A DNA stretch of 64,000 nt from Podarcis cretensis (Eukaryota), in NCBI GenBank assembly GCA_951804945.1, contig OX638161.1, positions 36,580,001 through 36,644,000 of the forward strand, written 5' to 3'. Shown piece by piece: positions 5,962 through 18,268 of the stretch. Every line of letters begins with the position of its first letter. Positions within the stretch are counted from its first letter, which is position 1. The notes beneath the pieces were generated by a model that saw nothing but the letters and a program-made list of their open reading frames with translations, was not told the origin of the DNA and made no database searches. Both the position numbers and the translations under genes were made by a program.

Positions 5962-8900
5962 TCAGTCATAGTATTTCTCTGCCCGCCGCACCTGGCAGTA
6001 CATCAGCATGGAGAAAACGATGCCCAAGACCTGGAGAGACATAAATCAGGTCAGACTGACAACAAAAATTGGGGGCAGAAGAGTCCCAGCCCAGCATGTC
6101 ACTTCCTTACATTATTGGAATTAAGATGCTGCCTCCTGAACTCCCATCCTCGCTGCTGCCTCTAAAATGTAGGAATGCTGAGCATAAGGTCTCAGGTCCA
6201 ACCACCCGGGATCTCCAAGCAGGGCTGTCTAAAAGGCTGGAAAGCTGCTGCCTGTCCGTGTAGACCAGGTGTAGCCAATGGGCTGCCCTCTAGATATTTT
6301 GGACTACAATTCCCATCACCTGTGACCTCTGGCCATGCTGCCTGGGGCTGATGGGAGTTCTAGTCCACAACTTCTAAAAGGCCCCATATTGGCTAACTCT
6401 GCATAGACTCTATTAAATGAGCCAATATCCTGGCTTCAGGCTTCCCAGTCACCTGCTTCTTGGCCCATTTTGTACAAACTGGAGGTGGCAGGGGCAGCTT
6501 CTATGTGGTCTTTTCCCAGTCAGGAAACCATCCTCCTGGACAGTGTTCTCTCCTAAAGGGGGATGCCTTTTGAAAGCACAGATTGCACCAGTTTACGTGT
6601 TGCTTCCAATTTATTTATTTACTCCCTGTGGGACCATGGCCAGTGTTGGAAAGAATTCCTGCCCTGGCTGCATCCTATTCTGTGGTCCCCTGCAGACAAC
6701 CCCACCTTCTGTTCTTGTGTTGATGGTAATGGGTGGCACATGTGTTGTTGCACCAGAGCGGCCTCAGCAGTTACTCAGGTCAGGCGTGTCCCCTCCCATG
6801 GCTGTTCCTTCTTGCTCACCTGGACAACAATGATGCAGGCGGCAAAGATGCCCATGGCTGATATATTCTCTCCTAGCCAGCGTTTCACCTTCTCGTAACA
6901 GGGCTTTAGGGGAATAGAGCACAAAACAAACATGGTCACCAGAGAGCGCTGGCAAGAAGAGGCAGTGCCTCCGATCTGGGTTGATCACACTCCTGTGCAC
7001 CGAAAAAATGTCGTCTTCCATTTAATCTAATGTTTATTTAACATGCAAGCTGTTTCTAGTAGGAACTCTGGATCATTTGTTCCATTGTGGAACTGCGCTT
7101 GCCATCAATCAGTTGAATATTTGGGTTGAGTATTAAACTGAATAGTCAGCCCAAATCAGCTCCTATAACTTAAAGTCTCCCCCCTTCTTATCCACTGGGC
7201 TGAAGTGAACAAGCCTTTCTTCTGCAACAGGAACCTTTGCCAGCAGGAGAGCTGCATTTTCTTCTTGGCAACTGGCTGGGAGCTGCAGGCTAGGATGGGT
7301 GAAGGAATGAAAGTAAATTCTACCACTGTACAGTAACTAGACTGGTTTCTGCACAGTCACCCCTCTCTGTCCTCCATCCAGACAAGCAACAGGCATTAGG
7401 AGAGTTCAAGGACATACTACAGTCAGGCAAAAACACTCTAGATACGAAGCAGCACCAGTGAGGGATGAAGCTGAGGAAAATTTCAACAGACAGATAGGCC
7501 TGGCAGGCTGCATTTGACCCTGAATTTCCCTGCCTCTGCTTTATGTGACAGCACTTCTCCTCGAAGAGGGCTATTACACACACACACACACCCCTCTCAG
7601 TATAAACAGAATAAACATACCCGGTTCCTTCAACTTTTCTTCCCAGGATTATTTTCCATGCAGCGGGTCATCTTCAGTGCTCTTTTCTGAACCTGTTCTA
7701 ATTTGCCTATATTGTTAAAACTGCAGCAACCCAAGCTGGTAACTGGTCACACTAATAGGCTGACCGCCACTCTCCTTTTATGTAAGTCTTTTGAGAGTAA
7801 AATATATTGGGGAAGGGAGGAAGATAACTAAATAAAATTGGATGTATCCATACTACAGCCTGGACTAGGTGTTGTTGTTTCCCCCCCAATATATTTATAG
7901 CCTGCTTCTCATTAGCGACTTTTAAGTATAAACAACATGACGTTTTAAAAATCATAAAGCAGATATGCCATCCTGCTCAAAAAAAAGAGCAAGAAAATCT
8001 CACAGTTAAAAAGATGAGTTAAATTAACATGACAGCTTTGAGAAGCGGCATTAATGAAGCAAATCAAAGACATCGCTGCAGCCGTCACCAAAACTCAGTT
8101 GGGTTGAAACATCAAAAGAGGGGTGGTGGACTAGGATGCTTTCCTCAGGAAAAGCAATCCACAAAGGCCCTCTGTCTTATTGCATATTGCTAACAGCAAG
8201 AAGACACACAGAGTAGCTAGTCTTGAAATTTTGGGGGGCTTCATAAAAGTCATGTGCTGGTCTGTAGACCACCAAAGACTAGGAACCCCTTCCCCTTCTG
8301 GTTTCATCATTCCCTCCTTCCTGAGACAGCTTAAGATTTAATGCACAAAATGTTAAAAACAGAGAAGTCTCAGCACCTCCTTGAGTGACAGTTCTCAGGA
8401 TTCACTGGGATAAGCCATGAAGTTACAACAGCACACAAGTAATTTTGAGTGTGTTGTATAGTCAGAGTGGGAGGTGAGAACCTACGGTCAAAAGCCAGAA
8501 GCTGATACATTTGTCGCAGGACAGAGTGTCAAAGGCCCTCTCAACCTCAACAGCTCCGAGAAAGAGGTCTGCTGGAGGGATTTAGTGCAGGCCAGCCTTG
8601 GTAATCGGACCCTGCATTTAGCCATTTGCCACTTGCTCAGGACACAAGCATTCCTGGAGGGGGGGTCAGTGGACAACCCAATGTGGAACCCACAGCCGTA
8701 GGGGATTCTCTGTTCCTTGAGGGCAACTCCTGCTGCCGTCTCACCTCCTTCCACCAGCTGGCGCTGTCCACTTGGCAGATGTCACTTTGCTGCAAGCAGC
8801 AGGATTCCGGAACCCACGTTCTGTTGCGGACCTCAAACCAGTCTGTGTAGTTCTGCACCCCACAACAGCGAAACTGGGAAGCAAGGGGAGAAATCAGTCT

Positions 8901-17261: not shown

Positions 17262-18268
17262 ATGATCATCCCAGTTCGGTGCTTCACCTGCGGGAAAGTC
17301 GTGGGCAACAAGTGGGAAGCCTACCTGGGCCTCTTGCAGGCGGAATACACAGAAGGGTGAGTCCACAGGTTTGCCTCTTTGCTGTATCTTCTAGGATTTC
17401 TGCCTTGTCTTTCTCTGTTGACCTGCTGAAGCAGGCCAAAGGCGCATCTAGCCCCCCATCCTGTTATCACAGATAATAATAACTTTTACTACACGACTTT
17501 TTTGGATGAAAACGTTTAGTATACCTGTAACGTTTTAATGGTCTGCTTTCCCCCATCTCTGTAAATGGCTTCTGGACTCCTTCCAGTTGTTGTTGTTATT
17601 GTTGTTTTATTTGTATCCCACCCATCTGACTGGGTTGTCACAGCCACTCTGGGCGACTTCCAGCATATACCGTATTTTTCGCTCTATGAGACGCATCAGA
17701 CTACAAGACGCATTTAGCTTTTGGAGGAGGAAAACAAGAAAAAAAAAATCTGAATCTCAGAAGCCAGAACAGCAAGAGGGATCGCTGCGCAGTGAAAGTA
17801 GCAATCCCTCTTGCTGTTCTGGCTTCTGGGATAGCTGTGCAGCCTGCATTCGCTCCATAAGACGCACACACATTTCCCCTTACTTTTTAGGAGGGAAAAA
17901 GTGAGTCTTATGTAGCAAAAAATACAGTAATAAAACATTACACATTTCCCTATACAGGGCTGCTGCCCTCAGAGTGCGGGATAAATTGGATAAAACTGGC
18001 TCTACACTGGACACGGGTATTTATCTGTCTCCAATCCAGAGCAGGCCACTGATCAAAGGCGCAGGAGCAGAGGGCCACAGAAAGGTTGGCAATCCGAGTC
18101 AGGAGAAAGGGAGAGAAAATCCAGAGACCACCCACTCATTTTTCCGTTCCCTCTCTCAGGGATGCGTTGGATGCCCTTGGCCTGAAGCGCTACTGCTGTC
18201 GGAGAATGCTCCTATCACACGTGGATTTGATTGAAAAGTTGCTGAACTATGCACCCCTGGAGAAGTAG
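17262..18268 (+). CDS. POLR2L: RNA polymerases I, II and III subunit RPABC5 (RPB10), 67 aa, complete
   Basis: Exons 17262-17356 and 18160-18268 give [67 protein letters not shown], with the CxxC...CC zinc motif. The acceptor ttttag| at 17250 implies an upstream non-coding exon. AATAAA at 18463-18468. Confidence 0.98.
17670..17927. mobile_element. Tc1/mariner-type MITE nested in an L2-like 3' fragment (about 17600-17965)
   Basis: TA-flanked imperfect TIRs ccgtatttttcgctctatgagac / gtcttatgtagcaaaaaatacag. The flanks (cccatctgactgggttg...cagccactctggg / aaaacatt...cagggctgc) match the fragment at 53320-53440. Confidence 0.75.

What the first reader, a model, noticed from the sequence alone, without database searches (positions are those of the whole stretch)
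5962..18268. TSPAN4-like/POLR2L head-to-head pair inside an AKT1S1-PRMT1-GYS1 block: candidate retained ohnolog module lost in mammals
Seen: intact tetraspanin (-) and RPB10 (+) genes diverge from one CpG island and are flanked by AKT1S1 and PRMT1, with GYS1 next. Established: in human, POLR2L is head-to-head with TSPAN4 at 11p15.5; TSPAN9 lies near PRMT8 on 12p13; AKT1S1, PRMT1 and GYS1 are on 19q13 without a TSPAN4/9-type gene or POLR2L next to them. These three regions are paralogous. By hand against recalled human TSPAN4 the protein is only about 60% identical, low for an amniote ortholog. Inference: this is the 19q13-side copy of an ancestral TSPAN-POLR2L-PRMT block, i.e. an extra TSPAN4/9-clade tetraspanin with its own RPB10 partner.
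Basis: partly seen in the sequence, partly recalled or inferred. Interest (0 to 1): 0.8.

Follow-up and report, generated by a model that had tools for sequence, protein, structure and literature searches.

The report
Lizard TSPAN4-like gene beside POLR2L
A wall-lizard genome carries an intact, expressed extra tetraspanin, the already described "TSPAN4-like"/tspan4b lineage that mammals lack, back to back with an RNA-polymerase subunit gene; the gene pair is real, but whether the polymerase gene is a second copy remains unproven.

Summary
A tetraspanin with 7 coding exons (-) and a 3-exon POLR2L/RPB10 gene (+) diverge between AKT1S1 and PRMT1, with a glycogen synthase gene (GYS) next.

**Tetraspanin.**
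- All seven exon translations are identical (239/239) to RefSeq "tetraspanin-4-like" of Podarcis muralis, so the gene is already annotated.
- It belongs to the "TSPAN4-like" lineage of Huang et al. 2010 (fishes, Xenopus, reptiles). The teleost members are named tspan4b.
- In an ML tree it falls in a clade of coelacanth, ray-finned fishes, amphibians, turtle, alligator, tuatara and squamates, apart from TSPAN4 and TSPAN9.
- An amniote-level origin from TSPAN4 is rejected (AU p = 2e-12).
- Four other squamates have both a true TSPAN4 and this gene. In the three with contig data the two lie on different chromosomes.

**Ohnolog reading.** I favour it over the 2010 reading of an independent duplicate, but only on location and age.

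**Weaker points.**
- The two first exons lie about 1.5 kb apart, and the CpG island covers only the POLR2L start.
- The PRMT1 adjacency looks squamate-specific.
- The "variant" RPB10 residues are the ancestral vertebrate state.
- A second POLR2L in this genome is neither shown nor excluded. Indirect data point to two POLR2L loci among squamates.

The result is mostly known biology. The scan had also noted the same stretch as a possible second RPB10 gene (s1-835264).

The parts
5543..6030 (-). TSPAN4-like last exon. The coding part is 6030-5965 (VLGIVFSMLMYCQVRRAEKYYD), the stop is 5964-5962, and the predicted 3'UTR runs to an AATAAA at 5548-5543.
   Evidence: The poly(A) signal is predicted only.
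6820..6903 (-). TSPAN4-like coding exon 6: the end of the large loop (sixth Cys) and TM4.
   Evidence: It is 28/28 identical to P0267.
8745..8873 (-). TSPAN4-like coding exon 5: large extracellular loop with CCG, PESCC and one further Cys.
   Evidence: Pfam Tetraspanin, E = 2e-7. It is 43/43 identical to P0267.
9239..9340 (-). TSPAN4-like coding exon 4.
10260..10334 (-). TSPAN4-like coding exon 3 (TM3).
11045..11236 (-). TSPAN4-like coding exon 2 (TM1-TM2). It carries the lineage-typical TEHRCLLLT.
   Evidence: Pfam Tetraspanin, E = 1e-10. Also.
11966..12045 (-). TSPAN4-like exon with the start codon (ATG at 12034). The acceptor is at 12045.
   Evidence: The loose end of an RNA contig matches 12016-12045 exactly.
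14572..14840 (-). TSPAN4-like first exon (5'UTR), with the donor CAAG|GTGAGG at 14572. It is CpG-poor.
   Evidence: A spliced RNA contig covers 14572-14744. tblastn of Lacerta isoform X1 reaches 14840. Also.
15000..15800 (.). Interspersed repeats between the two gene starts.
   Evidence: Contig depth of 10^3-10^4 in the DNA run, and loose ends with a tRNA-like SINE head.
16201..16800 (.). CpG island (GC 0.56-0.70, CpG o/e 0.68-0.77) over the POLR2L start.
16292..16402 (+). POLR2L exon 1 (5'UTR). Its 5' end is not defined.
   Evidence: RNA contigs with the joint 16402|17251, GT..AG, in three runs.
17251..17356 (+). POLR2L exon 2. ATG at 17262. It encodes residues 1-31 plus two bases of Gly32, including the Zn ligands C7 and C10.
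   Evidence: Pfam RNA_pol_N, E = 5e-14. Also.
18160..18480 (+). POLR2L exon 3. It encodes residues 32-67 including C44/C45. The stop is 18266-18268 and an AATAAA/ATTAAA poly(A) hexamer lies close to 18465-18470 (script offset ambiguous by one base).
   Evidence: Pfam and PDB, 34/35 identical to human. RNA contigs reach 18315. The poly(A) signal is predicted.
684..4181 (+). AKT1S1 (PRAS40) last three coding exons, convergent with the tetraspanin.
   Evidence: Pfam PRAS, E = 9e-19 and 5e-12. Also.
22816..39902 (-). PRMT1, convergent with POLR2L.
   Evidence: Pfam PRMT_C. One exon scores 78.6 bits against PDB PRMT1 and 72.3 against PRMT8.
44070..64000 (+). Glycogen synthase gene, GYS1-like. It runs off the window.
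   Evidence: Pfam Glycogen_syn. The best PDB match is human muscle GYS1. Also.

Best explanation
**What the locus is.** The window comes from a Podarcis wall lizard. The minus-strand gene is the lizard member of the TSPAN4-like (tspan4b) lineage. This is a fourth branch of the TSPAN4/TSPAN9/CD53 tetraspanin family, present in bony vertebrates other than mammals and not seen in birds.

**What the tetraspanin does.** It encodes a canonical 239-residue membrane scaffold with four transmembrane segments and a six-cysteine large loop. It is transcribed from its own CpG-poor first exon at about 14.6-14.8 kb. By homology it should organise membrane microdomains as TSPAN4 and TSPAN9 do; that step is inference.

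**What the neighbour is.** About 1.5 kb away, on the other strand and starting in a CpG island, lies a functional, spliced and well-expressed POLR2L gene. Its product is the zinc-binding RPB10 subunit shared by RNA polymerases I, II and III. The protein is identical to that of lamprey, shark, coelacanth, salamander, alligator and turtles.

**Most likely history.** The tetraspanin-POLR2L pair here is most likely the copy of an old TSPAN4-type/POLR2L neighbourhood that lies in the 19q13.33-like paralogon, left by the early vertebrate genome duplications. Mammals kept only the 11p15.5 copy (TSPAN4-POLR2L).

**Shown versus inferred.**
- Shown: gene structures, expression, lineage membership, age of at least the bony-vertebrate ancestor, and separateness from TSPAN4.
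- Inferred: origin by whole-genome duplication rather than a smaller duplication, and the function of the tetraspanin.
For: **Gene model**
- Exon by exon the model is 239/239 identical to P0267 = XP_028607609.1, tetraspanin-4-like of Podarcis muralis.
- Pfam Tetraspanin matches the full length. CD53 is the best solved relative.

**Lineage**
- Huang et al. [quoted passage not shown] Their frog and zebrafish sequences share TEHRCLLLT (frog) and the C-terminal FSMLMYCQ..AEKY motif with the window protein.
- The ML tree has 71 rows, with amphioxus and a hemichordate as outgroup. TSPAN9 gets 99/89, TSPAN4 99/98 and the TSPAN4-like clade 94/96. The core of the last clade (95/91) holds coelacanth, bichir, gar, teleost 'tetraspanin 4b', amphibians, turtle, alligator, tuatara and squamates.
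- An amniote TSPAN4 + TSPAN4-like clade is rejected, p-AU = 2e-12.

**Separate from TSPAN4**
- True TSPAN4 lies on a different chromosome in the same species: Pogona 358 Mb against 122 Mb contigs, Paroedura 188 against 31, Erythrolamprus 427 against 153.
- The flanks are AKT1S1, PRMT1 and glycogen synthase, which are 19q13.33 genes in human (established map).

**Expression**
- Spliced RNA contigs cover both genes, at depths of 114-456.
- The three exon-3 differences between the RNA species and the window are all synonymous third positions.

**Linkage elsewhere**
- RPB10 and TSPAN4-like are on contigs of identical length in leatherback turtle and coelacanth.
Against: - The order among TSPAN4, TSPAN9, TSPAN4-like and lamprey is unresolved. 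CD53 was not in the tree, so phylogeny alone cannot tell a 2R ohnolog from an early small-scale duplicate of TSPAN4, which is the published view.
- The only cartilaginous-fish member (Callorhinchus P0185) could also be a true TSPAN4 (AU p = 0.14). The firm age is therefore the bony-vertebrate ancestor only.
- The PRMT1 adjacency is probably a squamate rearrangement.
- Presence of a true TSPAN4 in Podarcis itself was not shown.
Confidence: 0.75

Rival explanations
1. TSPAN4-like arose by a small-scale duplication of TSPAN4, alone or together with POLR2L, after the genome duplications but before bony vertebrates radiated. This is what Huang et al. 2010 proposed.
For: The published reading is 'probably an independent duplicate of TSPAN4', and the paper reports 'no ohnolog quartets found'. 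The window protein is closer to TSPAN4 (60-61%) than to TSPAN9 (48-54%). The deep branching is unresolved.
Against: The gene lies on a different chromosome from TSPAN4 and inside a block of 19q13.33 orthologs. That is the paralogon expected for the missing fourth copy beside 11p15.5 (TSPAN4), 12p13 (TSPAN9) and 1p13 (CD53). A copied segment landing there by chance is unlikely. The clade is as old as the TSPAN4 and TSPAN9 clades in the tree.
Confidence: 0.2
2. This POLR2L is the only RPB10 gene in the Podarcis genome. It is not an extra partner, because the TSPAN4-linked copy was lost in this lineage or never coexisted with it.
For: The DNA run that matches the window shows single-copy depth (14-18) and no variant contigs on either coding exon at 80% likeness or more. 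Each RNA run lays only one POLR2L contig. The protein is the ancestral sequence and the gene is well expressed, as expected of a sole essential copy. In leatherback turtle the gene on the TSPAN4-like chromosome is named plain RPABC5, not '-like'.
Against: Naja naja has an intron-bearing RPB10 model on a 375-Mb contig, while its TSPAN4-like is on a 155-Mb contig. Snake TSPAN4 genes lie on the largest chromosome. The Anolis RPB10 and true TSPAN4 have nearly consecutive UniProt accessions, G1KR68 and G1KR70, which is a weak hint of adjacency. An ancient paralog would be under 80% identical in DNA and so invisible to the read test.
Confidence: 0.3
3. The tetraspanin is the lizard's TSPAN4 ortholog, fast-evolving and moved together with POLR2L into the AKT1S1-PRMT1 region.
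For: Some RefSeq records name members of this cluster plain 'tetraspanin-4' (Zootoca, Protobothrops, Pogona).
Against: It is rejected by the AU test (p = 2e-12). True TSPAN4 is 97-100% identical over the scored region between a lizard (Sceloporus), a turtle and birds, and it coexists with this gene in four squamates. Orthologs of the window gene exist in fishes and amphibians.
Confidence: 0.01

Closest known systems
TSPAN4-like lineage of Huang et al. 2010 (BMC Evol Biol 10:306). RefSeq calls it 'tetraspanin-4-like'; Ensembl/UniProt call the teleost gene 'tetraspanin 4b' (tspan4b).
   Same: It falls in the same clade in the ML tree. It has the same 6-Cys large loop and shares motifs with the published frog and zebrafish sequences. 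It is identical to the RefSeq model of Podarcis muralis.
   Different: Nothing differs in the gene itself. Only the reading of its origin differs: ohnolog in the 19q13.33-like region here, against 'independent duplicate of TSPAN4' in the paper. The divergent POLR2L neighbour was not discussed there.
TSPAN4 (human 11p15.5, head to head with POLR2L)
   Same: It has the same family, length and exon plan with phase-0 introns, and it has a divergent POLR2L neighbour. The human arrangement is from established knowledge and was not tested here.
   Different: Identity is only 60-61%. It forms a separate clade and lies on a different chromosome in squamates. The promoters here are about 1.5 kb apart and do not share a CpG island.
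TSPAN9 (human 12p13, near PRMT8)
   Same: It is a member of the same tetraspanin subfamily. A PRMT1/8-type gene lies nearby in both cases.
   Different: Identity is 48-54% and it forms a separate clade. The PRMT1 adjacency here is probably a squamate rearrangement (PMC5608299).
POLR2L / RPB10 (RPABC5), common subunit of RNA polymerases I, II and III
   Same: Pfam RNA_pol_N matches both coding exons. The four zinc-ligand cysteines are present. The protein is 67 aa long, identical to lamprey, shark, coelacanth, salamander, alligator and turtle RPB10, and the second coding exon is 34/35 identical to human.
   Different: In the genome it lies next to TSPAN4-like rather than TSPAN4. It carries V13 and S52 where mammals have I13 and A52; this is the ancestral state, not a variant.

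Membership tests
Tetraspanin (Pfam PF00335) | Full-length match to the family profile, covering four transmembrane segments. | tested here: met
   P0267, identical to the window model, scores 182.5 bits over profile positions 1-225 of 225. Exons 2 and 5 also match on their own.
Tetraspanin (Pfam PF00335) | CCG motif and the 6-Cys-a pattern of the large loop (CCG..[DN][WY]..PxxCC..C..C). | tested here: met
   The exon 5 and 6 translations read FRCCG..TDW..PESCC..DIC..PC. The pattern is taken from Table 1 of PMC2965184.
TSPAN4-like / tspan4b lineage | Groups with the published and annotated TSPAN4-like genes, apart from TSPAN4 and TSPAN9. | tested here: met
   The clade has support 94/96 and its core 95/91. 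Oryzias 'tetraspanin 4b' lies inside it.
TSPAN4-like / tspan4b lineage | Coexists with a separate true TSPAN4 in the same genome. | tested here: inconclusive
   This is met in Erythrolamprus, Pogona, Paroedura, Sphaerodactylus and the turtle Gopherus. It could not be tested in Podarcis itself.
TSPAN4 ortholog | Nests within the amniote TSPAN4 clade. | tested here: not met
   The TSPAN4 clade (99/98) excludes it. The constrained tree is 121 lnL units worse, p-AU = 2e-12.
2R ohnolog of TSPAN4/TSPAN9/CD53 | The duplication predates the split of jawed vertebrates. | tested here: inconclusive
   It predates bony vertebrates. The single chimaera sequence is not securely placed (p = 0.14). The lamprey position is unresolved.
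2R ohnolog of TSPAN4/TSPAN9/CD53 | Lies in the fourth paralogous region, not in tandem with a family member. | tested here: met
   The flanks are AKT1S1, PRMT1 and glycogen synthase, which are 19q13.33 genes in human. In three squamates it lies on a different contig from TSPAN4. The paralogy of the four regions rests on literature and established knowledge, not on a test made here.
POLR2L / RPB10 | RNA_pol_N domain with four Zn-binding cysteines, an intact reading frame and a spliced transcript. | tested here: met
Second (extra) POLR2L copy in this genome | Another intron-bearing RPB10 gene elsewhere in the same genome. | tested here: inconclusive
   No second copy at 80% DNA likeness or more appears in the DNA and RNA contigs. 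Indirect hints of two loci among squamates come from other species.
Bidirectional gene pair with a shared CpG-island promoter | Divergent starts under about 1 kb apart within one CpG island. | tested here: not met
   The first exons are at 14572-14744/14840 (-) and <=16292-16402 (+). The CpG island covers only 16.2-16.8 kb, and repeats lie between the starts.

The most novel reading that the evidence does not exclude
Non-mammalian vertebrates, squamates included, may keep two ancient intron-bearing POLR2L genes that encode the same or nearly the same RPB10. Each would lie divergent from a TSPAN4-family gene (TSPAN4 and TSPAN4-like), so that a tetraspanin/polymerase-subunit gene pair has stayed together in duplicate since the early vertebrate genome duplications. 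TSPAN4, TSPAN9, CD53 and TSPAN4-like would then form the first complete tetraspanin ohnolog quartet.
Probability: 0.4. Interest if true: 0.55.

Novelty: already known. Interest (0 to 1): 0.3.

Why it matters
The tetraspanin itself is an annotated member of a lineage described in 2010, so the main value here is tidying up.
- It shows that "tetraspanin-4", "tetraspanin-4-like", "tetraspanin-9" and "tspan4b" labels in databases cover one old gene that mammals lack.
- Its place in a 19q13.33-like block fits a fourth ohnolog better than an independent duplicate.

The more interesting open point is POLR2L. RPB10 is a core subunit of all three nuclear RNA polymerases and is treated as single-copy. 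If two ancient copies persist in reptiles and other non-mammals, each still paired with a TSPAN4-type gene, that would be a clear case of long-term retention of a linked gene pair. It would also be a caution for orthology calls between mammals and other vertebrates.

Tried and rejected

I used equal contig lengths and accession numbers as weak substitutes.
- The search of earlier findings by words (tetraspanin, TSPAN4, POLR2L, CD151, RPB10) and by sequence found only this stretch and the sister note s1-835264. A blank here means nothing.
- Paper searches for POLR2L duplicates (polr2la/b, RPABC5-like) and for POLR2L-TSPAN4 bidirectional promoters found nothing relevant.

**Searches of limited use**
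- The representative-library search with exon 2 returned mostly fragmentary or mis-modelled proteins. It served only to reach P0002 (Naja) and, from there, the named relatives.

**Ideas tested and dropped**
- I tested whether the A52/S52 difference in RPB10 marks two paralogs. It does not hold. Medaka's S-type gene is not on the tspan4b chromosome, and the Anolis S-type gene seems to lie beside true TSPAN4.
- I considered a retrocopy origin for POLR2L. The two introns and the spliced transcripts rule it out.

Exons were searched one by one by reference, and the whole tetraspanin was handled through P0267, a database protein identical to all seven exon translations.
- The two POLR2L exons were never joined for a search.
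Full report
**1. What is in the sequence**

The window has no gaps. On the minus strand, seven coding exons with GT-AG borders and phase-0 introns encode a 239-residue tetraspanin. Their coordinates are 12045-11966 (ATG at 12034), 11236-11045, 10334-10260, 9340-9239, 8873-8745, 6903-6820 and 6030-5965, with the stop at 5964-5962. 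Pfam Tetraspanin matches exons 2 and 5 alone.

On the plus strand, two coding exons (17262-17356 and 18160-18268, split by a phase-2 intron) encode a 67-residue RPB10. Both match Pfam RNA_pol_N, and the second is 34/35 identical to human RPB10 in solved polymerase structures.

- AKT1S1 (+): last exons match Pfam PRAS, stop near 4181.
- PRMT1 (-): 39902-22816. One exon scores 78.6 bits against PRMT1 and 72.3 against PRMT8.
- Glycogen synthase (+): from about 44.1 kb to the window end. The best solved match is human muscle GYS1.

**2. Species and annotation**

A profile-free search with exon 2 led to a Naja naja model (P0002). A word search from that model gave the named relatives.

Compared exon by exon, my model is 239/239 identical to P0267 = XP_028607609.1, "tetraspanin-4-like [Podarcis muralis]". 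The same sequence is filed for P. lilfordi. The window is therefore from a Podarcis wall lizard, and the gene is already annotated.

From here on P0267 served as the reference for the whole protein.

**3. The lineage is published**

Huang et al. [quoted passage not shown] Their frog (AAI67361) and zebrafish (NP_001076276) sequences share motifs with the window protein: TEHRCLLLT in the frog, and the C-terminal FSMLMYCQ..AEKY[YM][DE] in both. The 232-residue teleost type is called "Tetraspanin 4b" in Ensembl/UniProt.

**4. Phylogeny**

I built an ML tree of 71 rows (LG+C20), rooted on amphioxus and a hemichordate. It shows three clades:

| Clade | Support |
|---|---|
| TSPAN9 | 99/89 |
| TSPAN4 | 99/98 |
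| TSPAN4-like | 94/96 |

- A chimaera sequence sits at the base of the TSPAN4-like clade.
- Its core (95/91) holds coelacanth, bichir, gar, teleost 4b, frogs, caecilians, axolotl, turtle plus alligator, tuatara and squamates.
- The window protein sits next to Rhineura.
- The order among the three clades and the lamprey is unresolved.

Forcing amniote TSPAN4 and amniote TSPAN4-like into one clade costs 121 lnL units (p-AU = 2e-12). This refutes a fast-evolving ortholog. Placing the chimaera sequence with TSPAN4 is not rejected (p = 0.14). The secure minimum age is therefore the bony-vertebrate ancestor.

- The window protein is 60-61% identical to TSPAN4 and 48-54% to TSPAN9.
- It is 83% identical to the tuatara ortholog, 69% to turtle, 65-72% to amphibians and 49-54% to ray-finned fishes.
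- Among all hits down to E = 1e-43, the level of its amniote orthologs, there is no bird or mammal sequence.
- Absence in birds may be an assembly problem.

**5. A true TSPAN4 exists beside it**

A second search from Sceloporus TSPAN4 found true TSPAN4 in many squamates, turtles, birds and frogs. Over the scored region it is 97-100% identical between Sceloporus, a turtle and birds.

| Species | TSPAN4 contig | TSPAN4-like contig |
|---|---|---|
| Erythrolamprus | 427 Mb | 153 Mb |
| Pogona | 358 Mb | 122 Mb |
| Paroedura | 188 Mb | 31 Mb |

Sphaerodactylus and the turtle Gopherus also carry both genes. I could not show a true TSPAN4 in Podarcis itself.

**6. Ohnolog or small-scale duplicate**

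The tree cannot decide this. Location can. The gene sits among orthologs of human 19q13.33 genes, on a different chromosome from TSPAN4. By established maps the other family members lie at 11p15.5 (TSPAN4), 12p13 (TSPAN9) and 1p13 (CD53). Together with 19q13 these regions form a well-known fourfold paralogy. Huang et al. also draw four paralogous human regions for the TSPAN4 cluster.

A fourth ohnolog lost in mammals is thus the simpler reading. It would be the first tetraspanin quartet, against their statement that no quartets were found. I put this at about 0.75.

In alligator and human, PRMT1 lies next to BCL2L12. In Anolis it lies on a scaffold with TBC1D17, the human neighbour of AKT1S1 (PMC5608299). 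The adjacency seen here looks like a squamate rearrangement within the same region.

**7. Transcription and the "shared CpG island"**

All runs laid were contigs, so they show presence and splicing but not levels or ends. A DNA run of organism A is identical to the window over long pieces.

Three runs of organism H carry spliced contigs and so hold RNA:
- POLR2L has joints 16402|17251 and 17356|18160, both GT..AG, at contig depth 172-266. It therefore has a 5'UTR exon at <=16292-16402.
- A 1343-nt contig (depth 456) ends at 14572-14744. Its loose end matches 12016-12045 exactly, reading into the tetraspanin start codon.
- That stretch is therefore the tetraspanin's first exon. A longer Lacerta isoform aligns up to 14840.

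CpG o/e is 0.26 at 14.6-14.8 kb and 0.68-0.77 at 16.2-16.8 kb. High-copy repeats fill 15.0-15.8 kb. The genes are divergent neighbours about 1.5 kb apart, and they do not share a CpG-island promoter.

The three exon-3 differences between organism H and the window are all synonymous.

**8. Is POLR2L an extra copy?**

The sister note s1-835264 took V13 and S52 as variant residues. They are not. Both exon peptides are identical in lamprey, whale shark, coelacanth, Pleurodeles, alligator and two turtles. Mammalian I13/A52 is the derived state. The 5'UTR intron named in that note is real.

The read test found single-copy depth and no variant contigs on the exons at 80% likeness or more. This excludes a recent duplicate. 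It does not exclude an ancient one, whose silent sites would be saturated.

Indirect evidence from other species:
- RPB10 and TSPAN4-like lie on contigs of the same length in leatherback turtle (17,228,317) and coelacanth (172,207,807).
- In Naja naja an intron-bearing RPB10 model (A52) is on a 375-Mb contig and TSPAN4-like on a 155-Mb contig. Snake TSPAN4 genes are on the largest chromosome.
- The Anolis RPB10 (G1KR68) and true TSPAN4 (G1KR70) have almost consecutive UniProt accessions.

Two POLR2L loci therefore seem to exist among squamates. Whether one genome holds both is not shown. I estimate 0.7 for two copies in Podarcis and 0.3 for a sole copy.

**9. Verdict**

The finding is real and carefully observed. 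Its centre, an extra TSPAN4-type tetraspanin absent from mammals, has been published since 2010 and is annotated in RefSeq. The ohnolog reading is a reasonable refinement.

Noticed in passing
window 17600-18000 (POLR2L intron 2) and 15000-15800: These are very high-copy repeats. Summed contig depth reaches 10^5-10^6 at 17.6-18.0 kb and 10^4 at 15.0-15.8 kb in the DNA run. Loose ends at 15120 read like a tRNA-derived SINE head (TAGCTCAGTTGGTAGAGCA...).
   Followed up: no
window 39870-39902 (-) and 44070-44160 (+); CpG-rich 39-41 kb: The PRMT1 first coding exon ([10 protein letters not shown]) and the glycogen synthase first coding exon are divergent, about 4 kb apart, with a CpG-rich stretch at the PRMT1 start. 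In human and alligator the neighbour on that side of PRMT1 is BCL2L12, so this looks like a squamate rearrangement.
   Followed up: partly
window 16045-16108: A purine-rich simple repeat (GAAAG-type, translating as KERKKERK) lies just upstream of the POLR2L CpG island. The reads tool skipped it as a repeat.
   Followed up: no
RNA contig of run X18 (record 24, 1441 nt) laid on 17249-18308: This contig holds POLR2L exons 3, 2 and part of exon 1, then runs on for about 1 kb that was not listed on the stretch. It may be a chimeric contig or sequence from beyond the laid region.
   Followed up: no
database records seen: Members of one orthologous gene carry many names: tetraspanin-4, tetraspanin-4-like, tetraspanin-9, tetraspanin-9-like, tetraspanin-7-like and tetraspanin 4b. 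Coelacanth and Callorhinchus 'tetraspanin-4' fall in or near the TSPAN4-like clade.
   Followed up: partly
hemichordate Glandiceps talaboti records: Its TSPAN4-type gene and its RPABC5 gene are on contigs of identical length (23,840,982), with RefSeq accessions about 120 apart. This hints that the TSPAN4-POLR2L linkage predates vertebrates.
   Followed up: no
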